Source of the DNA: Malacoraja senta
Taxonomy: Eukaryota
DNA length: 64,000 bases
Assembly: GCA_038087875.1 (NCBI GenBank)
Contig: CM075985.1
Location: forward strand, 27,404,001 to 27,468,000
Reading direction: 5' to 3'
Every line of letters begins with the position of its first letter. Position 1 is the first letter of the stretch. Below are positions 1,178 to 39,709 of the stretch, piece by piece. The notes under the pieces were generated by a model. The model was given only the letters and a program-made list of their open reading frames with translations. It was not told where the DNA came from and did no database searches. Both the position numbers and the translations under genes were made by a program.

Positions 1178-1179
1178 AA

Positions 1180-20297: not shown

Positions 20298-20446
20298 CCA
20301 AACCCATGTGTCCCGGGCTGTGTCTGCCCTGACGGTGTGGTGGAAGATTCCAGTGGAAGATGCATTGCACCATCTCAGTGTCCTTGTGTATTTGGAGGTG
20401 AAACCTTTGGGTCTGGAGAAACAATCAAAAGGGACTGCAATAAGTG
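20298..20446 (+). CDS. Mucin exon, TIL'/E' (PNPCVPGCVCPDG...RDCNK)
   Basis: aag acceptor after pyrimidine tract / gtgagc, phase 0-2. Confidence 0.88.
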
Positions 20447-20532: not shown

Positions 20533-20671
20533 CACATGCAAAATTGGCACATGGGAATGTACCAATGATCCATGTCCAAAGACATGCCATGTTTATGGAG
20601 ATGGACATTACATGACCTTTGATGGAAAGCGATACACTTTTGATGGCAACTGTGAATATATCTTTGTTGAG
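20533..20671 (+). CDS. Mucin exon, VWD3 start (TCHVYGDGHYMTFDGKRYTFDGNCEY)
   Basis: tgtag / gtaaga, phase 2-0. Confidence 0.94.
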
Positions 20672-21509
20672 GTAAGATAGAGAACGTCATATTCAATGTG
20701 CATTTTTTTTCTTTTTCATTTAGTTGTAAACATATATGATAATACTTACATTTTAAATCTTTACATTCTTTCTAAGTTTAGGCAGACATGCAAAAGATTA
20801 TTGTTAATTGATATAATGATTGTAATCAGTCTATTAAAATATTTCACTGAAGTATTTATTAAAAATTTCTCCATAGTGTAATTTGTTCATTTAAAATGGA
20901 TCGGTCCTAGCAACTACTTTTGACATTTGGTCGGCCTTTGGTTGTTGTTATTGATGGCTGTTGGAGGAGAGGGAGTAATACATGTGTGCAACTGGAATTG
21001 TTCACACATTTGCTTGTTCAATCACTCAAAGAATTTCACACTTCAAAATTATGACAGATGACATTCTAAACATGAAGCAGCATATTAGATCGCATGTTTA
21101 AAAGTACAAATTGTCTCAGACACAATCAGCAAGAATGGTTTTGAGTGTAATCTGAAATCTCTGATATTGCTTCTGAGATATAAATGAGAAGGTAAAAATG
21201 AACAAAATGTATTAATCAGATTAAATGATCTGAGATTCTATAGTATGAATAGTTCTTCAGCAAACCTTAAATGCTTTTGAAAGTGTTAACTATCACTTGG
21301 TGCTAAGGGTTTCAAGAGCTGTTATTATGACCTTGTCTTTTTCCCTTCCTTTGTCCTTATATTTTCTTGAGCTCAGAGGATAATGAAAATATATATAAAT
21401 CTTGATGAACTATAAATTATACTGGAATTATTGAGCTGGCTCTGCCATGCCAGATTATGATTGGTTAAAATTATGCTGCACCAAATTAGTCAAGTTATCT
21501 TAATTTTAG

Positions 21510-21614
21510 GACCGATGTCTGCGAAAGATTGGCACATTCCAAATACTGACCGAGAGTGTTCCCTGCTGTGAAAATGGAGTGACATGTTCAAGAAACATCA
21601 GAATCATATTTGAG
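21510..21614 (+). CDS. Mucin exon, VWD3 ([19 protein letters not shown])
   Basis: tttag / gtatat, phase 0-0. Confidence 0.92.
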
Positions 21615-21755
21615 GTATATGCGCTTTGATTTATAACAATTAGAATGCGTAAGATGGCGTTTTAAAATAAAGCATCCAAATGGATCCTTGCAATGATTTA
21701 ATTTAGTTTATTCAGCATGTTATAAATCAATGTATTTTCAAATATATTCTTATAG

Positions 21756-21944
21756 GATAAAGAAATAGTTCTGTTGAGTGGAAATAGAGTGAGTGAAATA
21801 TCCCTTGGCAAAAACCAGTGCACGGAAAATTTATATACAATTCACAACGTTGGACTTTACTTAGTCATAACATTTTCCAATGGGATAACTGTGATATGGG
21901 ACAAAAATACAAGATTTTCAATCACATTGGACCCCAGATGGAAG
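21756..21944 (+). CDS. Mucin exon, VWD3 (VGLYLVITFSNGITVIWDKNTR)
   Basis: tatag / gtatgt, phase 0-0. Confidence 0.92.
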
Positions 21945-23489
21945 GTATGTATGATTGTAAATTAAAATGTTTCCTTAATTTCTGTTTATTGATAGAGAAA
22001 ACATAATGAGAAGTTGTAAAACAAAACTTGTGTGGCATAATTCATATGAGAAACGTGGATGTGGTGTGAAAAATGTTTAACTAAATGTTCGTAGACAATT
22101 GAGCTGTAGATGGAATGGACAACACAGAATTTGGTAATAAATGATGGACACATTCCCTGAGCAATGCAGCATTGGATTCAAAATAAATGAGATGAAACTA
22201 TGGTTTTTCATTTATTATTGGGCTCATTATCAGCTATTCAACTTTAAGAAGCAGCTGAACAATAACCTACATTTCTTTGTATGACAATATTAAATAGTAC
22301 TTAGAAGCATTACGAGCATTACCAGGAATTGTGAAAAGGGTAGGGAGCTGCATTGTTTAACAATAGAGGAAAACTGGCACAAAATAACTATGGAAAACGG
22401 AGTTGACCACAGATGTCCACAATTTTTTTTAAAGTAGCACTAGAATGGAAATAATGTGAGGGGCATAGTTATTATGGTCATTCTTCCATTATGTTAAAAT
22501 TCAGATGCATCCCTAGTCCTTGGTTGCACAAAATTAGGTATTGCACATGTTATCTTCACGTCAGCTTGATAGGTCTATCACATAATTGAGGGAAGCTCGA
22601 ATTAGAGATTTATTGACACTCTGGTGACATACTAACACTCTAGCAGATTTCATACATGTGGTGGTAAGAGGAAATGAGAAGGAAGAGAAGGGAAGGGATC
22701 AGAATGGTGCTATTATGCAGGGTAAGGGAAGGTTGAGACGAGCAGATGAAGGGTTGACAGAGTCCAATAAATCAGCTGAGAATGGATCATTGTGATGGGG
22801 AGAGGAGAGGGGGGTGGTGGTAGGGTTTTAATGCAGATTAAAGGGTCAGGGTATTAGTGGAGATCGACATTGGGTAGTACATTAAATTCAGCAGGTTTTA
22901 AGTCATTATCTGACTTTCATGCAGCTCTCCCGAAATAGCAAAATGGTAGAGAGGGTGTTGCCTTATTGAGTAAGGAGAATGTCACGGCATTAGTCCGAGA
23001 TGACATTACTGATAGTTAAAAAAAAAAAAATAAGAGTAAAAATGTTAAATATATATGAAGAGACATTTTGATAGGTACATGGATAGGATAGGTTTAGAAG
23101 GATATGCGCAAATGCCTTCTAAGTGTAGATGGAGCATGTTGGTCGGCGTGGGGAAGTTGGGCTGAAGAGGCCTATTTCCACATTGTATGACTCTATAACT
23201 CTAATAGAAACTAATGACCTCCTGTGTGGCTTTGGGACGAAATTGACATTGGGGTCACAAGACTGGATATTGACAGGAAATGTCCTATCAAATTCTCAAA
23301 ACAGTGAAAAATATTCCAGAAATTATTATCACACTTCCCTCATAGACAAAACTTCTCCATGTGCACAGATCGAATAAAACACCAACACGGAACTGGAGAT
23401 TTTTAAGCAAATATGTTTTTATGACATCTTTGGTATATAAGCTTCGGGATTTGTCAAGCTGGGAATAACCAATGTGAATCTAAAAAAAC

Positions 23490-23695
23490 TGAATATGCTG
23501 GAAAGTCTTAGCAGGTTAGGCAGCATCTGTGAAAAGTGAAGCAGTTAACATTTCAGGTCAAAGACCCATCTTCAGACCCTTCTTCAGCCTTTGACCTGAA
23601 AAATTAATTGTTTCTCTTTCCATTAGTGTCTCCTGACTTGTTGAGTTTTGGAGGATTTTGTTTTAGTTTCAGATTTCCAGTATCTTAAGTTTTTT
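23490..23695. mobile_element. Degenerate Penelope-type palindromic element
   Basis: Related to 13248-13478; inverted tttcaggtcaaag / ctttgacctgaaa. Confidence 0.55.
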
Positions 23696-24853
23696 GATTT
23701 TCATTTAATGTGAACCTGAAGCTCCCAATGCGGTGTTCCAGGATGTGACGAGAGGCCAAGGTGAAAACCTTCACTGGAACAATCCCAACTCAAAATCTTG
23801 TCTCTAAGTCAATTGGCAGTGTGGAAAGGCAAAACAGAATCCACATGGGTAGTGCAAAAGGCTTCCTCAAACCTGTCAAAAGGCTACCATTAAACATATG
23901 TATATATAAAGTAAAAGCTTTATATGAAATGATAAATCACTTAAATGAAAGCAAAAATACAAGAGGAATTGTTTTAAAATTACCGCTTTGATGCCATTTA
24001 ATTTCAAGAGTCTGCAAGTACTGTATATATTTAAAGACAACAGTTCACATACAGGTTTTGAATTAGAATTTATGAGGTTGACATTTCATTCAAAGGATGG
24101 CTTGATGCTTTGAGGTTAAACAGTAACAGTAGAAATGTGTACAATGTATGTATATGTGGTAAAGATCATGAGGATTCAAAGCCAAGAGTTTGTTGAAAAT
24201 AAGGAAGATGAAATATAATTGGATCAGATAGTCTTGAATTATTCTTCATTTTAAATTATACATTTAGCAGTTTAATTTTCTTTTATATACTTGTGCCATC
24301 TTTTATCATGAAAAGTTGTGACAATGGTGAAGGCCTTCAACCAATAGATTAGTTAATCAATCCAGGACTGCCCAAAATCCCCATATTGTATAATTTAGCA
24401 GTTTATTGAAAATACTTTGAATTTTCAACCATACTAATCCATAGGTAATGAGTGAAATAACTTGCTTTACTTATTTACAAACTAAATTATAACCTCTTTA
24501 TAGCTAATGTCTTTGGTTCTGGTTGTGATGTAAAACCCTCTTGATGCTTCGCTCTCTCTATGATTGCGTTTATTTTTGTAGTAAACAAAAGCTGTGCTTC
24601 TGAAGCGAGGAACTGAAAATTATACAAAAGATCAAAGACTAGGTCAAAAATTAATTAAATAATTGTAATGATTTAATTGATTAATTATGTTTGTATGGTG
24701 CCATATTGGATCTCAAGAAGAGACTAGGTGGTTTATTGCAATGAAAGATTGATAATTTTGACATTTGTATTGGGTTAACTAGGAAAAAGTAGGAAATTTG
24801 AATTGTACATTTAGAATAGTAACCATTATTTTTGCTTTTTTTACATACATAAG

Positions 24854-25093
24854 AATAAGGTTTGTGGCCTTTGTGGAAATTTCAATGAAAACATTGAAGA
24901 CGACTTAACAACGAAGGGGAACTCCTTGGTGACCAGCTTTATGGCCTTTGGGAACAGTTGGAAGTCCATGCAGTCATGCTCTGACACAGTCAATGAAATA
25001 TACCCATGTGATAACAATCCATATTGTTTAGCATGGGCTCAGAAGAGGTGCAGCATAATTAGTGGCCCAGTCTTTCAAGCTTGTCATAAAATG
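24854..25093 (+). CDS. Mucin exon, VWD3 end/C8-3 (NKVCGLCGNFN...FGNSWK...NPYCLAWA)
   Basis: aag acceptor (an in-frame alternative gives start 24860) / gtaaga; CGLCG motif. Confidence 0.92.
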
Positions 25094-25172
25094 GTAAGAT
25101 GCCAGTTAAATTTGAAATTTAAATATAATCCATAATGCAATCATGATTTCTGACATTGTGACTCTTTATCAG

Positions 25173-25329
25173 GTTAACCCAATCCCATTTTATGATGCTT
25201 GTGTCCAAGAAGCTTGTGTTTGTGATATGGAGGGAAAATACCAGGGTTTGTGTACTGCTATTGCTGTGTACGCAGAGGCTTGCAACAAAGCTGATGTTTG
25301 CATTCGCTGGAGAACCCCTGAATTCTGCC
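25173..25329 (+). CDS. Mucin exon, C8-3 ([21 protein letters not shown]...WRTPEFC)
   Basis: atcag / gtaagt, phase 0-1. Confidence 0.93.
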
Positions 25330-26583
25330 GTAAGTCTAAACTTCTGTATTCCTTGTAGAAAACAATTAAGGTATAAGGGTTCATCAACATACTTTTATAG
25401 ATAGCAGAACACATTGATCCACAGAGTACCATAATTATTCAGATTGTTGTTTCAGATTCCTGCATCTGCAGACTCTTGTGTTCTCAAAGTCCAGATTGAT
25501 GCTTGGTGCTGTTTAAAATCTGTGTCATTTTGATTGCAATTGTAATTGCAATAAAGAAACCATATTTCCTTCTTCAATTCCCTGTCTCTTTTGACACATG
25601 ATCCTCCATCTTCTACTTGGTTCAGTAAACAGTGCACAATTAATTATCCGAGAGTCTCCTCCAAATAGAATCAAGGTTTCAAGAAGATTGGCCTTTATTG
25701 CCTTCCATCACAGTGAAGATTGGGGGGAATCCGCTGTGGTGGATGTTTATGTTAACTTTTATGTAGTTGTGTGTCTTGTTGCTTTAAAAAAAAAATATGG
25801 CTGTATGGTAATTTGAATTTCACTGCACCTTAATTGGTACATGTGACAATAAACTGACCTTGATACCTTGATTCTGTTTGGAGGATACTCTGGGGTAATT
25901 ATTTGTGCACTGTTTACTGAACCACTTTTGGGCTCACGATGGATAATATATCAAAACTGATTTTGGTCCTTGCAAAGAAAGGCAGGTCATTTTGATCCTT
26001 TCAGTGAAAGGCAGGTCACTATCACTGTACACTTTTAATCCTTGATTCATCAAACAAAATACATTCAGAACCTCACGCAGCAGAATATTCCAACATCTGC
26101 TGATCTGCAACTAATCCACAATATTTGTTTCATTAAATCTCGTCTGTTTGCTTATTAAGGAGATTTGTGGCTATTAATTTGAAGATGATGTTCTGCCAAC
26201 ATTCAGTCTCTATCCTCCAAGTTTGGCATACACTTAAGAATAAATGCATATATCATTCCATCTATCAATGTTACTGTTGGTCCGCTTTATCTAAAAAAAG
26301 ATACTTTGCAGGTTGATTGTATTGGTGCTCATGACAATTCTCCTTTACCTACTACATAAGTCAACTCATTTATCAACATGTATACTCTTTGGAATAGGAG
26401 ATTAAATTTGTCCGAGTATCTGCCATGGTAAGGACAGATGTCTAAGAGTCCAACAATCCAGTTCACAGACCATTATCTATAAAATAAATATACAGTGACT
26501 ATTTGCCATGCAATATTGTGCTCATTTTGGGCAATGAATAACCAAACCAAAATCACAATTTGATTGTTTCTTTTATTTTCCAG

Positions 26584-26697
26584 CTGTATACTGTGACTAT
26601 TATAACAGTCTTGGTGACTGCAGTTGGCATTATCAGCCGTGTGGAACAACAACAACAAAAACATGCACAAGGAAAAATTACTCTGCAAATCTAGAAG
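26584..26697 (+). CDS. Mucin exon, TIL3 ([21 protein letters not shown])
   Basis: tccag / gtgctg, phase 1-1. Confidence 0.9.
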
Positions 26698-27016
26698 GTG
26701 CTGTTTAGAATTTATTCAAATATGTCACAATCATTTTACAATTTTTTAAAACAATACTTTTAGGTTAGACTAAGTTTCAGTTCTTAAATATAAAAATCAT
26801 AATAATCAATTCATTATGCAATTCATTACACATTATACTCAGTTAAAGTATCTATATATTTTTATAAATCTTCATAAAAAATTCATGCTTATATTGTCAT
26901 TTGTTGGAGATTTGTCCATATTTAGAATGGAGATACATTTTATTGTTGTCAAGATCTCCTGGATTTACAACATTCCTGTTTATCTTGATGGTCATTTTTA
27001 CTTCTCGCTGCTTTAG

Positions 27017-27158
27017 GTTGCTATGCCAAGTGCCCAGATAATGCTCCTTACTTGGATGAAAATATTATGAAATGTGTTACACTACGACAGTGCACATGTT
27101 ATAATGATGGGAGAATACTACAACCTAGTGAAACAACAATAAGTGATTGTGAAGAATG
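27017..27158 (+). CDS. Mucin exon, TIL3/E3 ([21 protein letters not shown])
   Basis: tttag / gtaaag, phase 1-2. Confidence 0.91.
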
Positions 27159-27977
27159 GTAAAGTAGTCATATCAGTAAATGTATTTAGCACTGTTCTAA
27201 TATTGAAAGAAAAAAACAAGATAAATGCCAAAAAATTGGTTATACAAATATTCCCTTAATAATGCCATAAATAATTTTTGAGGTTTAAATAGCGACATTA
27301 GCTATTTTAATAATTGAAATACAAAATGCAGTCTAGGATAATTTCACACCTGAACAAAGGCCAAAATAATTGTATTCAAATTCCTTCCCACCCACCACCC
27401 TCCCTCCCTCACCTACTTCAGTGACTTTAATCCACAGTTTGCAGTTATATTCATTTTCTGTTCCTTCTGCAAAAAGTTCTTCATTTTCTTTATTCTCTCT
27501 GTCCAACAATAATCAGTGACTATTCTATCTGAGAGTCCATCCCTTAATAATTATTCTTCATTATTACACTATATTGTAATATTTGTTGTGAATTATGAAC
27601 ATTAAGTGAAGGCTATTGCTCCTTTAAAGGTTAACTTCTCCATGAGTTGCAACAATAAAGTGTAGGTGGTCTGTGATTACCCATGAATAAACCAACAAAA
27701 TGTATTAAAGCTTCTTATGTCTCATTCTGCTATTAGTAAAGAATCTATTACCTTGACCATACATTGCCTCCATTACATTTATAAATCCTCCTGTGGACTA
27801 TGGTTTTTGGTGGTGATTTCAGAGCTAACAGAGTTTTTACCTTTCCAATTCTTGCTTTGTATCTATTTGTTGTCCATCTTTCCAGAGAGGTTGAACCATT
27901 GCAACACAATATGTCTTTAGACTAGTTTGTAGTTCTTTAGTTTGTTTTATTTGTAACATCTTTCTTTTTGTTGACAG

Positions 27978-28009
27978 TACATGCCATAATGGAATCACTA
28001 CTTGCCAAA
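27978..28009 (+). CDS. Mucin micro-exon, E3 end (TCHNGITTCQ)
   Basis: gacag / gtaagt, phase 2-1. Confidence 0.85.
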
Positions 28010-28189
28010 GTAAGTAATAACTTTCAGCATTCACCTGTTAAAAGAATGCATATTTGTAATTAATTATTGTTTTTCGATAAAGGAGAATGTTTGCTTATTT
28101 GCAGTACAATATTAATAGTATCAGCAGTTGTAGTTATATCTTCAGTTTAAATATTTCCAAAACACTACTTTTCAAATGCCAGATGTGAA

Positions 28190-28700
28190 TAATTAGCACA
28201 TCTGTAGAAGTTGGTGAGAGTTGTTGAAGACATGCCAAACTTGCTAAGCCTTCTGAGGAAGTAGAGGCATTGGTGTGCTTTCATGGCCTTTGCTTCAATA
28301 CGGCTAGTTCAGGACAAGTTGCTGGTGATATTTACTGCTAGGAACTTGAAGCTTTCAACCATCTCTATTTTGGCACTGTCAATGTATGCGTAGCACTTCG
28401 CCTGAATTCTGAAGTTGATCACTATCTCCTTTGTCTTGTTGACATTGAGAGAAAGGTTATTAACGTGACACCAGGTTACAAGGTTCTCAATGTCCTTCCT
28501 GTACTCCGTTTCATCATTATTTTGGTATCCGTGCCACTATGGTGGTGTCACCCATGAATTTGTAAATTGAGTTAAATTTGTACGAGGCTGCACAATCGTG
28601 GTGAATAAGGAGTAATGAAGGGAGCTGAGAACACATTCTTGCGGAGCACCCATATTGGGTATTATTGTAGAGGATGATTTGTCACCTACAACTTGTACTG
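28190..28700 (-). mobile_element. Rex1/L2-like LINE RT remnant
   Basis: GAPQECVLSSLHYSLFT motif. Confidence 0.7.
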
Positions 28701-29912
28701 AAGTTATAGCAAAGCTAAGAAACACTCATGCATGCAGGCGAAATGTACCCAACATTGATGACCCCTGCATTATAGAGTGATTGCATTTGCTGTAATCGTG
28801 ATTTTCTGCAACACAATCTCCTTTTCCTCTTGAATCCCACGTTATAAGTGGAGAATGTTTTTCTCTCATTTTAAACCAATTTATCAATGATGACAAGAGA
28901 AGCCACCATTCTTATTTAACATTTGAGACCAACATTAGACCCAGATGAAACAACAAGTCACTCAATATTGTATGGCAATAAGATTTGAACATGAGTCATT
29001 TTGTTGATTGGGTTAGGAGTCCCAGCTGAGGCGCCCACCTTTGTCATGCTCCCTCCAGTCCTATGATATGTGAACTCGTGTCTCAGACCGTAGCACTGCC
29101 GGGGATTAATTTGAAAGTCGTACTGTCTGATGCACAAGGCTCGCTGAACATGAAAGGGTTTACTAAGTGGGTTTATTTGGGAAAGGAATGGAATTCAAGG
29201 GTTGGGATTCATGGGAGAAAAGTGACGTAGAAGGAATTAATGGGGCAACACAGTGCTGTCTAAGTGAAGTCTGCTCACCTCCCTGTGACCACGTGGCTTT
29301 CCTCCGTGTCCTCCTACATCTCAAAGATGGGGGGTTTGCCTCTGTAAGTTGCTCCTAATGTGTAGGGAACAAATGAAAAAGTGGTATAACATAGAACTAA
29401 TGTTAATGGGTAATCGATGGTCAGCGTGGACTCGGTGAGCCGAAATGCCTGTTTCCATGCTGTATCTTTAAACTAAACGAATGAGTTAAAGCTCGGTGGC
29501 TGGGAGAAGTGGAGTAAACACTGAGGGATTACTTTAAGGAGATGGCCAGGGCTACTGCGACTCCCCACATTGCACTCACGGGTGAAGATCGCAGCAACAC
29601 TGCACTCTGAGACATCTGTTTATGTGTTTTTGGTCTGCAGAAGACATGGCTGTGACTGCCAACCCAATTGACACAGTGACAAAACATAACATTTGTTGTT
29701 TTGTTTGAATTTCTATATATATATTTATTTGTTTATTTTCCATTTTGGTAAGTGCAAATTTTAATCTATCTCAAATGTTTTGGTAGTTGATTACGAAATG
29801 GATAAGGGCAAATTTCTATTACTTAAATGACAGTAGCATGGTTGTTGCCTTGAGGAAATATCAGAAATAGATAAGGACTGAAGTTTTATTATGTACGTGT
29901 TCATAACAACAG

Positions 29913-30005
29913 GAATAAAGACCACAACTGTTCCATCTACAACACTGTTGACCACAACTCCACTTACATCAACTTCAACAATTTCTTCACCAATCACTAG
30001 CCCAG
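29913..30005 (+). CDS. First PTS exon (IKTTTVPSTTLLTTTPLTSTSTISSPITSP)
   Basis: aacag / gtaagg, 93 nt, phase 1-1. Confidence 0.85.
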
Positions 30006-31807
30006 GTAAGGTGATATTAGTTACAGGTTATGGCATGTAATATTTACAACATGGTAAGAACAGATTTCGAAAGATCAGAATTGAAACTGGACATTGGTAT
30101 GTCTGTACTTTTGGACATAAATGGGGTTCATAAGCAGGTTATCACTTTCCAACACGTTTCATGATGTTGACGATCAGTACCTTTAATCTGCATACTGCCC
30201 CTGGGTCTCAAAGAGATGACAAACATTGTGTAAAAAGGGCAAATGAGAGTCTCTCCTGGCTCCACAAGGCAAATGTATGATTCTGTCAAGTAGGTCTCAT
30301 CTCCATTCACATTCACAGCTCCTGCCTCATAGGAACAAGCCCAAAGCAACTGTAGGTGTAAGAGGCAATTTGTATGGATAAAGTCTGAGCTTTGGCTCAT
30401 GTTTTAAACTTGCTTGTGAAAAGCACATAAGGTCAGGGTTTCATGTTGCCAGCTTGGCTAAATGTTGATAAGAATAATGAATGTATATCGGGAACATCCT
30501 CACATAGAACAGTACAGCACAATAACAGGCCTTTTGATTCACACGATGCTCGGTTCAACTAATCTCCTCTGCCTGCAACTAATCTCTGCCTGCACAATTC
30601 ACCATTTTGTGGCTGGGCAATGTTTAGAGAGTGTGGTAGGTGTTGAGTGCCTGACCCACTGCTGAGGGTGGTGATGGAGGCAGATACAATTGTGGTGTTT
30701 AAGATTCTTTTGGATAGGCACCTGGATATGCAGGAAATGGAGGGTATGGATTATGTACTGGCAGATAAGGATTGGTCTTGGTATCATTGTTCAGCACAGA
30801 CATAGTGGGTTGATGGACCCGTACCTGTGCTGTATTGTTCTATGCTCTTTTTGAGTAAAATTGACAACCGAATATAATGTCTGTTTAATTATATTTAGCA
30901 ATTCTAAAACTGTTTTTTTTTTAAAGGGGTTAGTAAGATGGATTTTTCAGAAAGCATATTCAGAGAAATGTAAATTTTAGTTTTAAATATTCATCAGTTT
31001 TAACTTTGGGTTTTGTGTTATTTCAGTGGGGACCTACATTTCTGAGTGGCAGAAATCAGCCAATGCCCAGCCCCATCCACACTAGTACCACCTCTGCATT
31101 TGCCCATTTCCTTCTAAACCTATCCTATCTATGTACCTATCCAAATGTTTCTTAATATATTTTTTTAATTTTTACTTTTATTTGGGGTTTTTTAACTGTC
31201 AGTAACATCATCTCAGACTAATGCCATGACATTCTCCTTAATCAATAAGGCAACCCCTCTTCTACCATTTTGCTATTTTGGGAGAACTGCATGATTCTAT
31301 GACTAAATGTTGGATCTCAATGAAAATATGAAGTAAAACAGATGTGAGATCAAACTGGCTTTCTGCAATGTAAAGTTCATGAAATGATTTGTGATGCATG
31401 CCTTCTGTATACATTGTGGCCAATGATCTACCAGATACATACTAAAAAAGGGGTCCCAGGGTAATTGGCAAAAGAACCAAGGGCAAAATTAAAATATAAA
31501 TGACCTTAAACACAAATTTGCAATAATTTGGAATGTGCTGTTGGAAAGATATATTTTATGAGCAGATTCAAGTTTGCCTTTTAAAATGAAATTACAAAGT
31601 CTGATAATTACCTAAAACCTGCTGAATTTAATGTACTACCCAATGTCTTTGGTCTCCACTAATACCCTGACCCTTTAATCTGCAACAATGCTTAAATATA
31701 GTACCACTCGTGTGGCAACAGACGTTTATTTGCCTTGCTCGTACGCCACAATTTCTCGTCAGCAGTTCATGGGATGTTATCTCGTTTCAAAGACTTGATA
31801 TTCAAAC

Positions 31808-32085
31808 AGTGCAGCAACTGTAGGGTTGCTGCCTTACAATGCCAGAGACCCGGGTTCCATCCAGACAATGGGTGCAGTCTGTACGGAGATTGTACTTCCT
31901 CCCTGTGAGCGCATGGGTTTTCTCCTGGTGCTCCGATTTCCACTCCACTTTCCTAAGACTGCAGGTTAATTGGTTACTGTAAAAATTTCCCCTAGCTCAC
32001 AGAATAAAACTAGTGTATGGGGGATTGATGGACGTGCAGACTCGGTAGGCTGAAGGGCCTCTGTCTACGCTGTATATCTAAACCT
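31808..32085 (+). mobile_element. V-SINE-like SINE (another degenerate copy at ~29255-29480)
   Basis: Similar to 7826-8110. Confidence 0.7.
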
Positions 32086-32338
32086 ACACTAGAATGGTGC
32101 TTTGATACACCACAAAGGAAGGACAGTAATGCCCAAAGTAGGTCCAGAAGTCTAAGTTGAAACACATACAAATATTACCACTGAATGTAGTGTCGGTTGT
32201 AAATTTGCAGTGATTTGTTGACATTATTTTGCACAATCTATTTTAAGTTTATGCATTATATGCTGATTTTGTTACCACTCTCCCAAATGTGTCATTCTTC
32301 AAGTTGAATGTAAAGGCCGTGTATGCATTTGCTTACAG

Positions 32339-32407
32339 AAAAAACAACAACAACAACAACAACAACAGTGAGGACCACAACAGAATCTACCACCAGTCCC
32401 ACAACTG
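32339..32407 (+). CDS. PTS micro-exon (EKTTTTTTTTVRTTTESTTSPTT)
   Basis: tacag / gtgagt, 69 nt. Confidence 0.85.
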
Positions 32408-32632
32408 GTGAGTGATAACTTCTCGCAATGTACACTCATGGGGTTTTATATAACAGCTAAGCGCATATACATCACATACTTGTGTTCAGTAACAGGCCTT
32501 TCTCCTCCTTGCTTCAAGTCTTGCAATTTCTGCTCAGTAGCTCATGATCCCATTTCAGAATCATTATAGATGGTTCTCTGGTGTCGGATAGGAATAGTGC
32601 AGCACTGCCAAGACTGTGTTATTCTGCCATAG

Positions 32633-32687
32633 TTTTTTACAACTGTCCCCACGACTACAACTGAGTCTACCACCGGCCCCACAACTG
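32633..32687 (+). pseudogene. Truncated remnant resembling the 3' tail of a CysD exon
   Basis: Matches CysD-exon tail and donor context; nearest AG gives 55 nt, which would shift frame. Confidence 0.5.
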
Positions 32688-33081
32688 GTGAGTGACGCCT
32701 TCTCTCAGTACTTGTTAAAAGACATTTTAATGCAACTATGCTTAAATACAATACCACTTGCGAGTTGTAACTGCCTTGCTTTGTGCGCCATAATTTCACC
32801 TCAGCAGTTCATGAGATATCATCGCATTTCAAAGTCACCAGATCCAAACAAGAATGGAGATTTATTGCAGCACAAAGGAAAGCCAGTAATGCCTAATATA
32901 TGTCCCGCTTAATCTGGAGTTGAAACACTTACAAATATTACTGCTGAATGTAGTGTTGTAATGATATTGTTGATATTATATTTATTTTAATTTATACAAT
33001 GTATGCTGAGTTTGTTACTACTCTCTCAAGTGTGTTATTCTTCGAGTTGAATGTAAGAGCCGTGTATGCATTTGTTTACAG

Positions 33082-33135
33082 AAGAAACAACGACATCCAC
33101 AACCACAACAGAATCTACCACCTCTCCCACAACTG
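33082..33135 (+). CDS. PTS micro-exon with GC donor (EETTTSTTTTESTTSPTT)
   Basis: tacag / GCaagt, 54 nt. Confidence 0.6.
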
Positions 33136-33826
33136 GCAAGTGATAACTTCTCTCAATGTACACTCGTGGATTTTATATAACAGCTGAGTTCATACTCATC
33201 ACACACTCGTGTTCTGTAACAGGACTTTCTCCTCCCTGCTTCAAGTCTCAAAATTTCAGCCCAGTACCTCGTGATTACAATTCAGAATCCGTGGGTTCAG
33301 TTTGGATGGTCCTCTGGCGCAGGGTAGTATATACTGCAGCGCTGCCAATACTGTGCAATACATTTCAGCTTACCATATTTCACTACAATGTTTACTGAAA
33401 GTCCTCTGCATGATGGTCAAAATGGAGAGGTGCAAGAGAAAGTTTTGATGAGACTTCATAACCAGAAGGTTTTGTAAATGTAAGCATACAACTGAAATCT
33501 GAGACAGCATAATGGAGAGAGATTAAAAATCAAATGTGATATACAAAACCAGCTGATCATCTGAAACAGTTAAATTTACTCTTGGGTCCTAAAGCCATAT
33601 GCGTAGTTGGAAGATGAGGCACTGTACCTTACACTGAATACTGAACTTTATTGGAACTGTGTTGGAGATACAAAATGGATATGTAGGGAACATTTAAATG
33701 ACAGACACTTTAATTCTCATAATTAATATACACTACGGTAAATCTGTTTTGGTCCCCACTCTGCTGTGGACCTACCCTTCCCTTTTCTTATATACTCACT
33801 GCCATTCCTGATAATTTTTAGATTTT

Positions 33827-34466
33827 ACTAAACCAAGCACGGACCCGTTGGGCCCGAATACCCCAACGCTAAATTACTACTAACCTGTTCCCATTGTGAC
33901 GCGAGTCAAAATGGCGATCTCAAAATGGCGGCAGGCCCGGTAAGCTTTCCCCAACTGCGTAAGCGCAGATACCTGGCCCAGTGCGCAGGCGCAACTGCGG
34001 TGGTCAACGTTGTGCCGTTGATGGCAGAATTTCAGTTAAAGTTAATAAAGAAATAGAGGCCCATTGGAGGTGTTTGTAAAATAGGAAACTTACCCGTGGA
34101 GCCGCTGGGTCCCTGTTGTGACGCCAGGAAAGTACACGCGAAAAATAAAAGTGGCGATCTGAAAATTAGCAAAGGCCCCAGCTGCACAGGCATGGCTGAG
34201 GAACCGTTGAGTGCCATTGGTGACGCCAATCAAGTAAAGACAGCAAGTGGGGGGCATTGTTTGAATTTTAATTGTCAATAACTTGTAAAATATAACGTCA
34301 ATCTGAAGGGAAATTGATACTGCACATCACAGGACAATGGTGAGTAAGGTGGGCCAAAAATTGTAGCGCTATCGTGTATCGTTTTGGCTGTATTTCAGGC
34401 ACGCACACACATCGAAACAAACAAATAAACAAGATGAGAGATTTAGTGGTATATATAGATAGATAG
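33827..34466 (+). mobile_element. ~640-bp insertion without TSD; candidate non-autonomous Helitron/Helentron
   Basis: Absent from paralogous site at ~59226-59240; 5' subterminal hairpin; 3' end tatatagat(agat). Confidence 0.6.
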
Positions 34467-34798
34467 ATTTGTTTCTTTGCAGTAACACTTTTTCCAGACA
34501 TACCCCTTGTTCTTTCTTCTCCTTTCCTTCCATCTTTCAGTCACCATTTGGGTCACTCAATCTCCCCTGCTCTTTACATCCTCCCCTATTTCTCTGCACC
34601 GTAAATTTTGTTTCATTCTAAATTTTCCAGTACTTATCAAATATAATCATTCTCAAATGTTAATTCTTAACAGATGCTGCTTGACCTACCAAGTACTTCC
34701 AGTAGTTTCTGCTTTCATTTTTCTTATGTCTGAAATCTGCTTGAGTAGTATAAGAATTGAGTTGACTTTGTGATTTGAATTTGTTTGTTATTTTCCAG

Positions 34799-34843
34799 AA
34801 GAAGCATCAACTGTGACATCAACCAGCATTCCTTCCACAACAG
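34799..34843 (+). CDS. PTS micro-exon type H (EEASTVTSTSIPSTT)
   Basis: tccag / gtaagt, 45 nt. Confidence 0.82.
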
Positions 34844-36789
34844 GTAAGTGTTGGCTTTTTCAATATATATTTATTTTGCAACCTCAACTCATCACAATGA
34901 AAATCCATTTGTTTTCTTCTCTACCTTTTTGGTATACTCTCACAGGAGGTTATTGTCAAACATATTAAGTACAAACTGTTGCAAATTCTTTTAATAGATA
35001 AATTGAAACAATTTTCTTTTACTAAAAGGTATTAAAATCAGCAGAGGTTTTTAATGTGGGTGGCACCTGCTGATTCTATCAAAATACAGTTCATGCTTCT
35101 TTCTAGGTGCCTGTGCTAATATTATTTAGATTGCCATTATATATGTCTATAATCAATTATTCCTGATGTATTTTGCTTCAAACTGATAAAGTTGCCCATT
35201 TGAGGAACTTCACAACAATCATTCATTAATTTGGTCCAGCTTTTGAATGCCTCCATTTTTCTTCAAAATAAATACTTACTGCAATGGCAGTATTGACAAC
35301 TCCATTACTTTTCTAAACCACAGTTGTAATTTCTCCATGGGCAAACATTGGCTCAGACCTTATCCGTTTTCCCCATTTTTAATTTTATAAGTAAAATGTT
35401 CGGTCGCATACGTGCACGATGCCTTACAATGCTATGTACGACAGTGATCGCAACTTCTACGTGTGGATGGCCATTGGCTCGCTAGGAGCTCATCTGCCCT
35501 TTGACAAGTCTTGTTTTTGGTCCTGCAGGGGGTTCACTGCCCACTCCTCACCTGGCAAATCAGGTGGGGGAGACGGTTTAGTCGCCGACTATCCGACCAT
35601 GGAGCAGGTAGCACGGGATTTCATGGTACCCGTGGCGGGGGGTAATCCCCCCTATCTTCTCTGCCATTTTGATATATTAGACCCTGTTCCCTGTTCCCTG
35701 TTCCCCATTTTTACTTTCATAAGTAAAATGTTCGGTCGCTCACAATGGCAGCTACTTTTAACATCATGCAGGAATTTGAACTCACTTCTTTATAAGAATA
35801 TGATAGGTAACTTCTTTATTTGGGCATGCGAGGAGGCTGTTTGGCCCATTGGGTCCTTTTCAACTTCCAACAGTACAATGTCATGTCCCCTGCTTATTTC
35901 CCTGTAACTCTACAACATATTCTCTCCCACATCCACTCTCCTTTGATTCTTTTGGTATTGGTCTATACAAAGGGATAATTTACAATAGCCAATTAATCTA
36001 CCAGTATGTCTCTGGGTGACAGGAGGAACCCAAGGAAGTACAGGGAGCCAATATAAGCTCCATAAAAACAGCACCTTATATCAGGATTGAACTTGGATCT
36101 CTCAAGCTTTCAGGCAAAGGCGAGGCACAGCCTTCCACAGCTTATTGAGAGTGGTCTTCTTTTCATTATAATCTCTTTCCTGCTTTAACTCTTGGTTCTG
36201 TTTTATGAATTGACAGCAAACGTGTTCCTTTATCATATATTATCCTGGAGCAGCTACCATTTTGCCATTTCCCTCTTGCCCACCAATTAATCTCTTTCTG
36301 CATATATGGTATATATTTTCGCCATATACAGTAGGTAGCATGTTTAAAGGTAATATGGTGAGGCAGCGCAACTACTCCAATAATGTTCTTCAATAGCATG
36401 CTGAGGCCAACCCATCAAAGTGGAAAGAATATCTGGCTGTTAAAATCATGCAATTGTTAGTGCACAGCTGCAGTCAGCTGCCTGATAAGTGACATCTCAC
36501 ATTTGTGCTTTATGCTTTTTCCCCATTGTTCTGTTCTGCACTGGCAATGACTGTTTCCCTATCTGATACTTGAGGTTGTATCTCAATTCAGATCAATCAA
36601 CAGTTCCCCAAACATATTGTTATTATTCCCATTTTACTGTTCCCATTTTCATTTAAACTGTAATTTGGAAGATTCATTTTGATGCACAACCATGTTTCTC
36701 AAATCTTGTTTTTTATATTTATGTTTAGTTTTTCCACTTTGTATTGTTTTATACAAGTTTGCCTTATGTTTTCTTTCTTTACATTACAG

Positions 36790-37131
36790 GCCCATTCTGT
36801 TTGGGTGTATGGTCTCCTTGGTCTAATGAACATACACCAAAACCGTCATCTCCAAATGATTATGAATTGTTGAAACCATATGGCACTAAATTGTGCCCAT
36901 CTTCTTCTGATAAAATTACTAATATTCAGTGCCAATTTGCCGACCATCCTCAATGGCCACTAAGTTTATCGCCAGATCTTGTGACCTGCAATAAAGTCAT
37001 AGGATTGATCTGCAAGTTCTCTGGATATCCTTTAGGCCAATTTTGTAGTGACTACAGAATTAGAGTTTGCTGCGAGCCAACTGAGACTACAACTGTCCCC
37101 ACGATTACAACTACCACCAGTCCCACGATTG
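36790..37131 (+). CDS. CysD (WxxW) exon plus Thr tail, unit 1
   Basis: tacag / gtgagt, 342 nt, phase 1-1; WSPW...DYE...CSDYRIRVCC. Confidence 0.92.
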
Positions 37132-37398
37132 GTGAGTGATACCTTCTCCAGTACTTGTTAACAGTCATTTTAAAGGAAGGACAACAATGTCCAAAGTATG
37201 TCCAGCTTGTGCTGGAATTGAACCAAATACAAATGTTACTGCTGAATGTCGCGATGATTATAAATTTGCAGTGACTTGTGTTGAAGTTATTCCACAACAT
37301 CGTTTAATTTATGCAATATATGCTGATTTTGTTACTATTCTCCCAAATGTGCCTTTCTTGAAGTTGGATATAAAGAACATGTATGCATTTGTTTACAG

Positions 37399-37458
37399 AA
37401 GAAACAACAACAACAACAGCCACGACCACCACAGAATCTACCACCAGTCCGACAACTG
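37399..37458 (+). CDS. PTS micro-exon A1, unit 1
   Basis: tacag / gtaagt, 60 nt. Confidence 0.85.
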
Positions 37459-37590
37459 GTAAGTGATAACTTCTCTCAATGTACACTCATGTTTTTTTGT
37501 TATCACAGCTGAGCTCATACACTCATGTTCCCATCCTTGCTTCAAGTTTCGCAATTTCATGATCCCATTTTAGAGTCTGTGGGTTCAGTC

Positions 37591-38340
37591 CACTATCCAC
37601 TCTACTAGTTACATCCTCGAAAAATTCTATAAGATTCGTCAGACATGATTTACCTTTCGTAAATCCATGCTGACTTTGTCCAATGATTTCACCACTTTTC
37701 AAATGTGCTGCTATCCCATCTTTAATAACTGACTCTAACAGTTTCCCCACTACCGATGTTAGACTAACTGGTCTGTAATTCCCCGTTTTCTCTCTCCCTC
37801 CCTTTTTAAAAAGTGGATTTACATTAGCTACTCTCCAATCCTCAGGAACTACTCCAGAATCTAAAGAGTTTTGAAAAATTATCACTAATGCATCCACTAT
37901 TTCTGGAGCTACTTCCTTAAGTACTCTGGGATGCAGCCTATCTGGCCCTGGGGATTTATCGGCCTTTAATCCATTCAATTTACCTAACACCACTTGGCGG
38001 CTCACCTGGATTTCACTCAGTTCCTCCATCTCCTTTGACCCGCGGTCCCCTGCTATTTCCGGCAGATTATTTATGTCTTCCTTAGTGAAGACGGAACCAA
38101 AGTACTTATTCAATTGGTCCGCCATGTCCTTGTTCCCCATGATCAATTCACCTGTTTCTGACTGCAAGGGACCTACATTTGTTTTAACTAATCTCTTTCT
38201 CTTCACATATCTATAAAAACTTTTGCAGTCAGTTTTAATGTTCCCTGCCAGTTTTCTTTTATAATCTTTTTTCCCTTTCCTAATTAAGCCCTTTGTCCTC
38301 CTCTGCTGGTCTCTGAATTTCTCCCATTCCTCTGGTCGAC
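37591..38340 (-). mobile_element. Internal CR1 ORF2 fragment (copies at ~44636-45385 and ~51666-52415)
   Basis: Stop-free KSPGPD...GNYRPVSLTS...QHGF...SCLTNL; lacks both ends of the element. Confidence 0.93.
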
Positions 38341-38498
38341 TGCTGAATGTCGCGATGATTATAAATTTGCAGTGACTTGTGTTGAAGTTATTCCAAAACA
38401 TCTTTAATTTATGCAATATATGCTGATTTTGTAACTACACTCCCAAATGTGCCTTTCTTCAAGTTGAATATTAAGGACATGTATGCATTTGTTTACAG

Positions 38499-38567
38499 AA
38501 GAAACAACAACAACAACAACAACAACACCCACGACCACCACAGAATCTACCACCAGTCTGACAACTG
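38499..38567 (+). CDS. PTS micro-exon A2, unit 1
   Basis: tacag / gtaagt, 69 nt. Confidence 0.82.
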
Positions 38568-39148
38568 GTAAGTGATAACTTCTCTCAATGTACACTCATG
38601 TTTTTTTTTTATCACAGCTGAGCTCATACACTCATGTTCCCATCCTTGCTTCAAGTTCCGCAATTTCATGATTCCATTTTAGAGTCTGTGGGTTCAGTCT
38701 TGATGGTCCTCTGATGCAGGATAGAGATAGTGCAGCACTGACAATACTGTGCTATTCTGCTTGAGACTTTGAGCTGGGTTTGTGAGTGTGCTGTCGTGAC
38801 TGCGGTTTATCTTGTGGCCAATAGCAAAGAACAGAAAAATCTCTCCACTACCATGAATAATAACGATAATTACAACAACATTTCTCAGGAAATATTTTCA
38901 AGCTCTATAGTTTATACGATGAAGATATGAATAAGTAGTTTATGATGTTCCCTACATTTCAGCTGTGACCATATTTTAGTACAATTTCTTGCTGTAAGTC
39001 CTTTGCAAGATAGGAAGTAATTAAAGCAGTTTATCTCCACTTTACACAATCTCTTTTGAAATAGTCCAATTACCTGCATTTGTTGGTCATTCAAAATCTA
39101 CGATTCAACATGGATGATTTAATTGTCCATGAATTTGTTTCTCTTTAG

Positions 39149-39202
39149 AAGAAACATCTACAACAACTAGCACAACTGAGTCCACAACCACTTTCACAAC
39201 TG
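39149..39202 (+). CDS. PTS micro-exon B, unit 1
   Basis: tttag / gtgggt, 54 nt. Confidence 0.8.
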
Positions 39203-39293
39203 GTGGGTGGTGATATTTTCATTTGCAAATCTTTTTAACACAAGCTCCCCTATACATATACATATATCACATAATTCAAAACAAATGTAATGC

Positions 39294-39506
39294 TTTGGCA
39301 GACAAAAATGCTGGAGAAACTCAGCGGGTGCAGCAGCATCTATGGAGCGAAGGAAATAGGCAATGTTTCGTGCCGAAACGGGTCTGAAGAAGGGTTCGGC
39401 CTGAAACATTGCCTATTTCCTTCGCTCCATAGATGCTGCTGCACCCACTGAGTTTCTCCAGCATTTTTGTATATCTTCGATTTTCCAGCATCTACAGTTT
39501 CTTCTT
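39294..39506. mobile_element. Penelope-type hairpin element with 15-bp TSD (copies at ~46339-46551 and ~53372-53584)
   Basis: ~70-bp inverted arms; aaacaaatgtaatgc at 39279-39293 and 39507-39521; empty site in units 4 and 5. Confidence 0.8.
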
Positions 39507-39537
39507 AAACAAATGTAATGCCTTTATTATTTTCCAG

Positions 39538-39588
39538 AAGAAACAACTCCCACGGTGACACCAAGCACCACCATCACCTACACAACAG
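39538..39588 (+). CDS. PTS micro-exon C, unit 1
   Basis: tccag / gtgagt, 51 nt. Confidence 0.83.
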
Positions 39589-39709
39589 GTGAGTGATCAC
39601 CTCTGTCAGTAGGTTATTACCAGCCGTTACGTTCAGTCATTCAATTTCAACTTCCGCTTGCCCTCAGTTGAATCATTCTTCAAGTTGCATGTGATGCTTT
39701 CATTTGCAG

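What the first reader, a model, noticed from the sequence alone, without database searches (positions are those of the whole stretch)
20533..37131. MUC19-like D3 joined to CysD domains
Seen: D3 motifs ESVPCC, WDKNTR, NPYCxAWA, CDMEGKY and APYLDEN, followed by WxxW CysD exons. From memory these D3 motifs match MUC19/porcine submaxillary mucin rather than MUC2 or MUC5, and mammalian MUC19 is described as lacking CysD. Inference: either the MUC19-type ancestor had CysD and later lost it, or a phase 1-1 CysD exon was shuffled in.
Basis: partly seen in the sequence, partly recalled or inferred. Interest (0 to 1): 0.72.

Follow-up and report, generated by a model that had tools for sequence, protein, structure and literature searches.

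The report
Skate MUC19-type mucin carrying CysD domains
This window holds most of the front half of an intact mucus-protein gene from a skate-like fish: its head belongs to the MUC19 family, but its middle carries CysD domains usually credited only to MUC2/MUC5 mucins, which suggests the early MUC19 gene had them and later lineages lost them.

Summary
All five D3 motifs and the WxxW exons lie on the + strand at the stated coordinates.

- **Gene model.** I built a 22-exon, all GT-AG model (4148-28009) that encodes D1(C8)-D2-D'-D3 without a stop. It ends in phase 1. Downstream come phase 1-1 PTS mini-exons and five phase 1-1 CysD+PTS exons, the first at 36790-37131, arranged in roughly 7-kb tandem genomic repeats.
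- **Family.** In a maximum-likelihood tree the N-terminus falls in a chondrichthyan clade (100/100) that is sister to bony-vertebrate MUC19; the joint clade also has 100/100 support. An AU test rejects placement with MUC2/MUC5 (p = 3.5e-10). The protein shares human MUC19's loss of the MUC2 C1088/C1090 cysteines.
- **CysD distribution.** CysD is common in this clade: 40 of 58 chondrichthyan protein models have it. It also occurs in the Polypterus MUC19 gene next to LRRK2.
- **CysD origin.** CysD domains from the two lineages group together (96/81), which favours inheritance from a common ancestor. An AU test does not exclude the alternative (p = 0.26).

These genes are already in RefSeq under inconsistent names. 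This scan reached the same conclusion earlier on another piece of this genome (s1-175009). I found no paper describing it.

The parts
4148..4349 (+). Exon: D1 C8 module. This is the first coding exon in the window; the D1 VWD exons lie upstream of the window.
   Evidence: tblastn against P0168 and P0010; acceptor at 4148, GT donor.
4500..4625 (+). Exon: D1 TIL.
   Evidence: Junction optimisation against P0010.
6366..6486 (+). Exon: end of D1 TIL and the E module.
6580..6718 (+). Exon: start of the D2 VWD.
6853..6945 (+). Exon: D2 VWD.
7039..7111 (+). Exon: D2 VWD.
7206..7343 (+). Exon: D2 VWD.
11163..11318 (+). Exon: end of the D2 VWD.
   Evidence: Weak Pfam VWD match.
12964..13058 (+). Exon: C8-2.
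14172..14298 (+). Exon: C8-2.
16675..16921 (+). Exon: TIL-2.
   Evidence: Pfam TIL, E = 2.6e-6.
17004..17062 (+). Exon: E-2, a small exon found by eye.
   Evidence: It matches the corresponding P0010 segment.
17170..17255 (+). Exon: D' TIL'.
20298..20446 (+). Exon: D' E'.
   Evidence: Pfam TIL; 83% identical to P0010.
20533..20671 (+). Exon: start of the D3 VWD.
   Evidence: Pfam VWD, E = 2.9e-9; 89% identical to P0010.
21510..21614 (+). Exon: D3 VWD. It contains ESVPCC, whose second cysteine is specific to the MUC19 clade.
21756..21944 (+). Exon: D3 VWD, containing WDKNTR.
24854..25093 (+). Exon: end of the D3 VWD and start of C8-3. It contains CGLCGN and NPYCLAWA, the latter with a MUC19-clade-specific cysteine.
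25173..25329 (+). Exon: C8-3, containing CDMEGKY. The equivalents of MUC2 C1088 and C1090 are replaced here by Y and G.
   Evidence: Pfam C8, E = 5.6e-15; PDB alignment to MUC2; Javitt 2019, PMC6739602.
26584..26697 (+). Exon: start of TIL-3. The equivalent of MUC2 C1130 is retained (the cysteine in GDCSWHY).
   Evidence: Ungapped match to MUC2 chain residues 1099-1129.
27017..27158 (+). Exon: TIL-3, containing APYLDEN.
27978..28009 (+). Exon: end of D3 (E-3). It ends in phase 1.
32339..32407 (+). PTS mini-exon, phase 1-1.
34799..34843 (+). PTS mini-exon (EEASTVTSTSIPSTT), the conserved unit that precedes each CysD exon.
   Evidence: the same unit appears in the orthologue model P0168.
36790..37131 (+). 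CysD+PTS exon 1: 342 bp, phase 1-1, WSPW motif, 8 cysteines.
   Evidence: Pfam PF13330, E = 2e-13; PDB MUC5B CysD, E = 5.8e-10; boundaries.
37399..42347 (+). Seven PTS mini-exons of repeat unit 1: 37399-37458, 38499-38567, 39149-39202, 39538-39588, 39710-39769, 40172-40228 and 42303-42347. All are in phase 1-1.
43835..44176 (+). CysD+PTS exon 2.
44444..49392 (+). Seven PTS mini-exons of repeat unit 2: 44444-44503, 45544-45612, 46194-46247, 46583-46633, 46755-46814, 47217-47273 and 49348-49392.
50865..51206 (+). CysD+PTS exon 3.
51474..56237 (+). PTS mini-exons of repeat unit 3: 51474-51533, 52574-52645, 53227-53280, 53616-53666, 53788-53847, 54062-54118 and 56193-56237.
57721..58068 (+). CysD+PTS exon 4, a diverged copy with a WSHW motif.
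   Evidence: Pfam, E = 1.9e-13.
58321..59616 (+). PTS mini-exons 58321-58383 and 59572-59616.
60485..60832 (+). CysD+PTS exon 5.
61085..62570 (+). PTS mini-exons 61085-61153, 61732-61785, 61891-61941, 62063-62116 and 62514-62570. The gene continues past the end of the window.
35410..64000 (+). Tandem genomic repeat that carries the CysD/PTS exon cassette. The period is 7,045 bp at 99.6% identity, followed by 2,764-bp units at 97.6% identity.
   Evidence: Self-BLAST of the window.

Best explanation
The window holds the 5' and central part of an intact secreted gel-forming mucin gene on the + strand, from a skate or close relative. The gene is one of several tandemly clustered chondrichthyan co-orthologues of MUC19.

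What is shown:
- The N-terminus, D1(C8)-D2-D'-D3, belongs to the MUC19 family.
- It keeps all 75 cysteine columns shared with polymerising mucins and VWF.
- Like human MUC19, it lacks the C8-3 intersubunit cysteine (the MUC2 C1088 equivalent) but keeps the TIL-3 one (the C1130 equivalent).
- After D3 the coding sequence continues in phase 1 through mini-exons of 45-72 bp encoding Thr/Ser/Pro-rich stretches.
- Once per ~7-kb genomic repeat unit there is a 342-348-bp exon encoding a CysD (WxxW) domain plus a short PTS tail.
- Every central exon is in phase 1-1, so cassettes can be duplicated or deleted without breaking the reading frame.

What is inferred from the known behaviour of these domain families:
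- The protein dimerises at its C-terminus and multimerises through D3, probably by a single disulfide.
- The PTS parts are O-glycosylated.
- The CysD beads add non-covalent cross-links that stiffen the gel.

Evolutionary inference: the jawed-vertebrate MUC19 ancestor already had CysD and a fourth VWD, that is, a MUC2/MUC5-like layout. CysD was kept in cartilaginous fishes and polypterids and was lost in teleosts and in the tetrapods sampled here (mammals and one squamate).
For: Gene model:
- 22 exons, all GT-AG, encode an open 947-aa frame that ends in phase 1; a further 29 residues come from extending exon 1 to 4148.
- The CysD and PTS exons are all in phase 1-1.
- The conceptual splice parallels the RefSeq model of the orthologue P0168, which is 87.9% identical.
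- The orthologous Rhinoraja locus has the same periodic CysD array, with phase 1-1 exons. Two subclade-D paralogue loci, in Rhinoraja and Pristis, also encode CysD as single phase 1-1 exons.

Family assignment:
- Careful ML tree: MUC19 plus the chondrichthyan clade has 100/100 support on a stem of 0.43.
- The AU test rejects a MUC2/5 affinity, p = 3.5e-10.
- A tree from D'D3 columns alone gives SH-aLRT 100 for the same clade.
- The five motif columns match the MUC19 clade.
- The C1088/C1090 equivalents are lost, as published for MUC19, and the C1130 equivalent is kept.

CysD:
- Pfam PF13330, E = 2e-13; PDB MUC5B CysD, E = 5.8e-10.
- Present in 40 of 58 chondrichthyan MUC19-type models and in 4 polypterid models; absent from 125 MUC6 models and from mammalian MUC19 models up to 4,205 aa.
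- Polypterus P0159, which has a CysD, lies next to LRRK2.
- In the CysD domain tree the chondrichthyan and polypterid CysDs form a clade with 96/81 support.
Against: - Splicing of D3 to the CysD exons rests on phase compatibility and on the orthologue's gene model.
- The 3' end of the gene (D4, C-terminal domains) lies outside the window.
- The AU test on the short CysD alignment does not reject placing chondrichthyan CysDs with MUC2/5 CysDs (p = 0.26).
- No verified chondrichthyan MUC2/MUC5 CysDs were in the comparison set.
- Synteny of the chondrichthyan cluster with LRRK2/CNTN1 was not seen within 10-kb flanks.
- Gar, bowfin, coelacanth, lungfish and amphibian MUC19 were not sampled.
Confidence: 0.8

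Rival explanations
1. Exon shuffling. The MUC19-type ancestor had no CysD. A phase 1-1 CysD exon was copied from a MUC2/MUC5-type gene into a chondrichthyan MUC19-type gene and then amplified, with a separate acquisition in polypterids.
For: All central exons are symmetric in phase 1-1, and D3 ends in phase 1, so such an insertion would keep the reading frame. The AU test does not reject chondrichthyan CysDs grouping with MUC2/5 CysDs (p = 0.26).
Against: - The best CysD tree joins chondrichthyan and polypterid MUC19-type CysDs (96/81) and separates them from the MUC2/5 CysDs.
- CysD is present in all four chondrichthyan subclades and in an LRRK2-adjacent bony-fish MUC19 gene.
- This scenario would need two independent insertions that also converge in sequence, or one insertion before the split of cartilaginous and bony fishes. 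The latter is the same as saying the ancestor had CysD.
Confidence: 0.1
2. Hidden paralogy. The chondrichthyan clade is an ancient sister paralogue of MUC19 that bony vertebrates lost, rather than a set of MUC19 co-orthologues.
For: Chondrichthyan synteny with LRRK2/CNTN1 was not demonstrated. Support for the bony-vertebrate MUC19 clade is only 90/76.
Against: All chondrichthyan sequences retrieved, including Callorhinchus, form one clade (100/100) that is sister to bony-vertebrate MUC19. No chondrichthyan sequence nests inside the bony clade. The branching mirrors the species tree, and the clade shares the MUC19-specific cysteine changes.
Confidence: 0.06
3. The gene is a MUC2, MUC5AC or MUC6 orthologue, as the automatic RefSeq names of its relatives suggest.
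For: Relatives are named mucin-2-like, mucin-5AC-like or mucin-6-like. The CysD and D4 architecture looks like MUC2/MUC5.
Against: - The AU test gives p = 3.5e-10 against a MUC2/5 affinity.
- MUC6 forms a separate 100/100 clade.
- The C1088 equivalent is absent.
- The same clade also carries the name mucin-19-like, so these names are not evidence.
Confidence: 0.01
4. The downstream CysD/PTS array is not part of a working gene: it could be an assembly duplication, a pseudogene or untranscribed DNA.
For: The repeat copies are 99.6% identical, and there is no RNA evidence.
Against: - Every CysD and PTS exon is open and has canonical splice sites.
- The copies differ at a few sites: one S/T change in the CysD, and a 69-bp versus a 72-bp PTS exon.
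- An independent assembly of another skate shows the same array with intact exons.
Confidence: 0.03

Closest known systems
Mammalian MUC19 (including porcine submaxillary mucin)
   Same: - Same clade in the ML tree (100/100), at 44-46% identity over 947 aa.
- Shares the D3 motifs ESVPCC, NPYCxAWA, CDMEGKY and APYLDEN.
- Shares the loss of the MUC2 C1088/C1090 equivalents.
   Different: - Mammalian MUC19 models up to 4,205 aa have neither CysD nor a fourth VWD (Lang 2016, PMC4948705).
- The window has at least five CysD exons, and close relatives have D4.
- Chondrichthyans have several clustered paralogues rather than one gene.
Rhinoraja longicauda 'mucin-6-like' (P0168), the apparent orthologue
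   Same: - 87.9% identity over the N-terminus.
- Same order of domains: D3, PTS, then the conserved mini-exon followed by CysD.
- Same periodic genomic array of CysD exons in phase 1-1.
   Different: - The CysD domains are only about 63% identical between the two species, although they are nearly identical within each array.
- The RefSeq model stops inside the array.
Polypterid MUC19 (Polypterus P0159/P0160/P0050, Erpetoichthys P0224)
   Same: - Falls in the MUC19 clade.
- Carries CysD (Pfam E = 1e-13 to 2.6e-14).
- P0224 has four VWD domains.
- P0159 lies next to LRRK2.
- Its CysD is sister to the chondrichthyan CysDs.
   Different: These models have a single CysD rather than an amplified array. 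They are 47% identical to the window in the N-terminus.
MUC5AC / MUC5B / MUC2
   Same: Same overall layout, D1-D2-D'D3 followed by PTS interspersed with CysD, with D4 in relatives. The CysD matches solved MUC5B, MUC5AC and MUC2 CysD structures.
   Different: - Separate clade, about 40% identical.
- They keep C1088 and C1090.
- Their CysDs form a different clade.
Teleost MUC19-type mucins (spiggin relatives)
   Same: They fall in the MUC19 clade, and many keep a fourth VWD. This was also noted by Lang 2016.
   Different: No CysD was detected in any teleost model retrieved.

Membership tests
MUC19 family | The N-terminal D1-D2-D'D3 groups with MUC19 in a phylogeny and is distinct from MUC2, MUC5 and MUC6. 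| tested here: met
   Careful ML tree gives 100/100. The AU test rejects a MUC2/5 affinity, p = 3.5e-10. A D'D3-only tree gives SH-aLRT 100.
MUC19 family | D3 lacks the cysteines equivalent to MUC2 C1088 (an intersubunit disulfide) and C1090 (Javitt 2019, PMC6739602). | tested here: met
   The window reads CDMEGK-Y-Q-G where MUC2 reads CDTGGD-C-E-C. PDB alignment; alignment columns; paper text.
MUC19 family | Diagnostic D3 sequence motifs. | tested here: met
   All five motif columns match the MUC19 clade and differ in MUC5, MUC2, MUC6 and the outgroups.
MUC19 family | Genomic position next to LRRK2 / CNTN1. | tested here: inconclusive
   The window contains only this gene. No neighbouring gene lies within 10 kb of seven chondrichthyan relatives. 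Polypterus MUC19 does lie next to LRRK2.
MUC19 family | Architecture described for mammalian members: no CysD and no fourth VWD. | tested here: not met
   The window has five CysD exons, and relatives have four VWD domains. This feature describes the mammalian members rather than defining the orthology group.
CysD domain (Pfam Mucin2_WxxW, PF13330) | The profile match exceeds the Pfam gathering score over the full domain length. | tested here: met
   51.2 bits against a cut-off of 22.4, covering profile positions 1-88 of 88.
CysD domain (Pfam Mucin2_WxxW, PF13330) | WxxW motif, a conserved cysteine framework, and similarity to solved CysD structures. | tested here: met
   WSPW or WSHW motif and 8 cysteines per exon. 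MUC5B CysD E = 5.8e-10, MUC5AC 9.1e-8, MUC2 1.4e-5.
MUC2 / MUC5 family | The N-terminus groups with MUC2/MUC5, and the C1088 equivalent is retained. | tested here: not met
MUC6 family | The N-terminus groups with MUC6. | tested here: not met
   MUC6, anchored by named bird and mammal sequences, forms a separate 100/100 clade.
Polymerising gel-forming mucin | A C-terminal cystine knot for dimerisation. | not testable with these tools
   The 3' end of the gene lies beyond the window. No D4 or C-terminal exons were found in the window or in the orthologous locus L002.

The most novel reading that the evidence does not exclude
The MUC19 gene of the last common ancestor of jawed vertebrates had the full MUC2/MUC5-like layout: D1-D3, PTS interspersed with CysD, and D4. 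The simple mammalian MUC19 is a secondarily reduced form. CysD was lost in teleosts and tetrapods, and D4 was lost later in tetrapods. In cartilaginous fishes this family, rather than only MUC5/MUC2, expanded into a cluster of CysD-rich gel mucins whose D3 probably links through a single disulfide.
Probability: 0.65. Interest if true: 0.5.

Novelty: new variant of a known kind. Interest (0 to 1): 0.4.

Why it matters
Reviews and the main evolutionary survey (Lang 2016) treat CysD as a mark of MUC2/MUC5-type mucins and describe MUC19 as a simpler protein. This gene and its relatives change that picture.

- **Family history.** The MUC19 lineage carried CysD, and a fourth VWD, early in jawed vertebrates. 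That alters how the history of the gel-forming mucin family is drawn, and it shows domain loss rather than gain along the line to mammals.
- **Annotation.** One clade in about 20 cartilaginous-fish genomes is named mucin-2-like, -5AC-like, -6-like or -19-like almost at random. This can mislead work such as shark skin-mucus proteomics.
- **A natural experiment.** These genes combine a D3 that lacks the C1088 interface cysteine with many CysD cross-linkers.

The advance is incremental. The genes are standard mucin parts in a new family context, and they are already present in public annotation.

Tried and rejected
- **Tandem Repeats Finder** found nothing, because the repeat period of about 7 kb exceeds its 500-bp limit. 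A self-BLAST of the window replaced it.
- **The one exhaustive protein search** was partly crowded by proteins with many VWD domains, as expected. The useful hits were recovered by re-ranking against the full spliced model.
- **P0109** was tested as a possible MUC2 anchor. It is closer to MUC5AC, so no verified mammalian MUC2 is in the trees.
- **Synteny:** Seven chondrichthyan loci showed no neighbouring gene within 10 kb.
- **Polypterid CysD exon structure:** P0224 and P0050 are not on record, and the P0159 gene is too long for its DNA to be returned.
- **AU test on the CysD tree:** not decisive.
- **Automatic exon-boundary heuristic:** it was off by 1-2 nt in other loci and was corrected by reading the junctions directly.
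- **Pfam on six other long ORFs** in introns or on the minus strand found nothing.
- **The protein atlas** only reconfirmed the WxxW domain.
- **Rejected reading:** the Cys-rich and Gln-rich ORFs that overlap the PTS exons in other frames or on the minus strand are by-products of the ACA/ACC-rich coding repeats.

Full report
**The observation.** Pfam assigns VWD, C8 and TIL to the D3 exons and Mucin2_WxxW (E = 2e-13) to the WxxW exons. The WxxW exon also matches solved CysD structures of MUC5B (E = 5.8e-10), MUC5AC and MUC2. The window has 39% G+C, no N, and five CysD-type exons.

**Gene model.** I used the stingray protein P0010 as a guide and optimised each junction for canonical splice sites and frame continuity.
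- The result is 22 exons from 4148 to 28009, all AG...GT.
- They encode an open frame from the D1 C8 module through D2 and D' to the end of D3.
- The D1 VWD exons lie upstream of the window.
- The last D3 exon ends in phase 1.
- Downstream, every coding exon is in phase 1-1. There are Thr/Ser/Pro mini-exons of 45-72 bp and CysD exons of 342-348 bp that include a short PTS tail.

**The repeat.** From 35410 onward the exon cassette, one CysD exon plus seven PTS mini-exons, is carried on a 7,045-bp tandem genomic repeat at 99.6% identity. Shorter units of 2,764 bp follow.

**What the gene is.**
- The exhaustive search and the named searches returned only cartilaginous-fish proteins as close relatives. 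NCBI names them inconsistently as mucin-2-like, -5AC-like, -6-like or -19-like.
- The nearest is P0168 from the skate Rhinoraja longicauda, 87.9% identical over 947 aa, with three CysDs by Pfam.
- The next tier, at 44-49% identity, is MUC19 of mammals, a squamate (Rhineura), paddlefish, sturgeon, bichir and reedfish.
- MUC5AC, MUC5B and MUC2-like proteins are about 40% identical.

**The tree.** I built a careful ML tree of 65 sequences over 972 columns (LG+C20, VWF and otogelin-like sequences as outgroups).
- All chondrichthyan paralogues form one clade (100/100).
- That clade is sister to bony-vertebrate MUC19 (90/76).
- The joint clade has 100/100 support on a long stem of 0.43.
- MUC6 is anchored by named bird and mammal sequences and forms a separate clade, as does the MUC2/MUC5 group.
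- Forcing the chondrichthyan clade together with MUC2/MUC5 costs 216.6 log-likelihood units; the AU test gives p = 3.5e-10.
- A tree built from the D'D3 columns alone gives the same placement.

At those alignment columns the MUC19 clade has ESVPCC, NPYC.AWA, C[DE]xEG.. and .PYLDEN. MUC5, MUC2 and MUC6 have EN.PCG, NPYR.AWA, CDSGGDC and .PYFDE..
- Three of these changes add or remove cysteines.
- The Y and G in CDMEGK-Y-Q-G align with MUC2 C1088 and C1090.
- Javitt et al. 2019 report that human MUC19, alone among the gel-forming mucins, lacks exactly these two cysteines, and C1088 forms an intersubunit disulfide (PMC6739602).
- The second interface cysteine, the C1130 equivalent, is retained.
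- All 75 cysteine columns that are conserved across the whole data set are kept.
- I therefore infer that the protein polymerises like other gel-forming mucins but with one D3 disulfide instead of two.

The indirect evidence is of three kinds.
- The exon phases are compatible throughout.
- Conceptual splicing reproduces the order in the RefSeq model of the orthologue: end of D3, PTS, then the conserved mini-exon EE.STVTSTSI.STT followed by CysD. That mini-exon precedes every CysD in both species.
- The orthologous Rhinoraja locus carries the same array, with CysD exons every ~6.6 kb running past the end of the annotated gene.
- In that locus and in two paralogue loci the CysD is again a single phase 1-1 exon of 339-342 bp.

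**Was CysD ancestral or shuffled in?**
- Among the retrieved proteins, classified by their best match, 40 of 58 chondrichthyan MUC19-type models have CysD and 37 have a fourth VWD.
- None of the 125 MUC6 models has either.
- Among 116 bony-vertebrate MUC19 models, only the four polypterid ones have CysD.
- 44 of those 116, mostly teleosts, keep a fourth VWD.
- The mammalian models, up to 4,205 aa, have neither.
- The Polypterus gene with a CysD lies directly next to LRRK2, the conserved neighbour of MUC19, so it is a positional orthologue.
- In a tree of 102 CysD domains, the chondrichthyan MUC19-type CysDs form one clade (100/86). That clade is sister to the polypterid MUC19 CysDs (96/81), and both are separate from the MUC2/MUC5 CysDs (88/62).
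- This pattern is what vertical inheritance predicts.
- The alignment has only about 100 columns, however, and the AU test does not reject grouping chondrichthyan CysDs with MUC2/5 CysDs (p = 0.26).
- No verified chondrichthyan MUC2/5 CysDs were available for comparison.
- I put the ancestral-CysD reading at about 0.65-0.7.

**Genomic context.** Family members are clustered on one chromosome. In Pristis three of them lie within 0.8 Mb. In Rhinoraja the window's orthologue and a subclade-D paralogue are 1.8 Mb apart. No LRRK2 or CNTN1 was seen within 10 kb of any chondrichthyan gene I probed, so synteny on that side remains open.

**What is already known.** Lang et al. 2016 (PMC4948705) describe CysD as characteristic of MUC2/MUC5. 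They record Muc19 in fishes, including Callorhinchus, and note that some spiggins have a fourth VWD, but they do not mention CysD in the Muc19 group. I found no paper on CysD in MUC19-type mucins of cartilaginous or basal ray-finned fishes. Shark skin proteomics uses the automatic names. The gene models are public in RefSeq. This scan had already reached the same conclusion for a paralogue on another piece of this genome (s1-175009), and it noted MUC19-type micro-exon arrays about 2 Mb upstream on this piece. I read those notes after my own trees were finished and used them only as context.

**Verdict.** The finding is a correct and modestly interesting point about domain history in a known protein family. 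It is not a new kind of system.

Noticed in passing
window 35410-64000; L002 54547-81223: The CysD domains are nearly identical within an array: 99.6% DNA identity between 7-kb units in the window, and three identical CysDs in P0168. Between the two skate orthologues they are only about 63% identical, although the N-termini of the same proteins are 88-91% identical. This suggests concerted evolution within arrays together with fast divergence between species.
   Followed up: partly
window 21552-21569, 25016-25039, 25221-25245, 26650-26660: D3 of the MUC19 clade has a rewired cysteine pattern. Two cysteines are gained (the second C of ESVPCC and the C of NPYC). Three are lost (the equivalents of MUC2 C1088, C1090 and about C1141). 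Which new disulfide forms is unknown.
   Followed up: partly
Proteins P0010-P0222: RefSeq names one monophyletic chondrichthyan clade mucin-2-like, mucin-5AC-like, mucin-6-like, mucin-19-like or uncharacterized. The name seems to depend on how much of the protein the gene model includes.
   Followed up: yes
CysD tree: for example P0173 d3513, P0177 d2221, P0028 d2509, P0019 d1510: In subclade-D paralogues the last CysD, just before D4, groups apart from the amplified internal CysDs across species. So there appear to be two old CysD types within these genes.
   Followed up: no
window 362-2011, 2909-3317, 9808-10642, 18378-18796: Interspersed repeat copies at 73-82% identity, some of them inverted, lie in the introns. 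The ORF at 3036-3275 looks like a fragment of a reverse transcriptase from a retroelement, but it has no Pfam match.
   Followed up: partly
window 32114-32474, 32848-33289, 37172-37590, 38339-38699, 39980-40300: Sub-repeats of about 355 bp at 80-94% identity each carry one PTS mini-exon plus flanking intron. The mini-exons therefore multiplied as units of exon plus intron. The copy at 32848-33289 did not pass my splice-site filter.
   Followed up: partly
P0119 (used as an outgroup): The protein that groups with the otogelin-like P0088 carries four CysD-like domains according to my broad HMM, so it may not be otogelin. This does not affect the rooting, because a VWF identified by its three VWA domains is also in the outgroup.
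   Followed up: no
Teleost proteins P0279-P0329: Teleost MUC19-type genes keep a fourth VWD but show no CysD and often no Pfam TIL hit. Their names are equally inconsistent: mucin-2, mucin-5B-like, mucin-6 and mucin-19.
   Followed up: no
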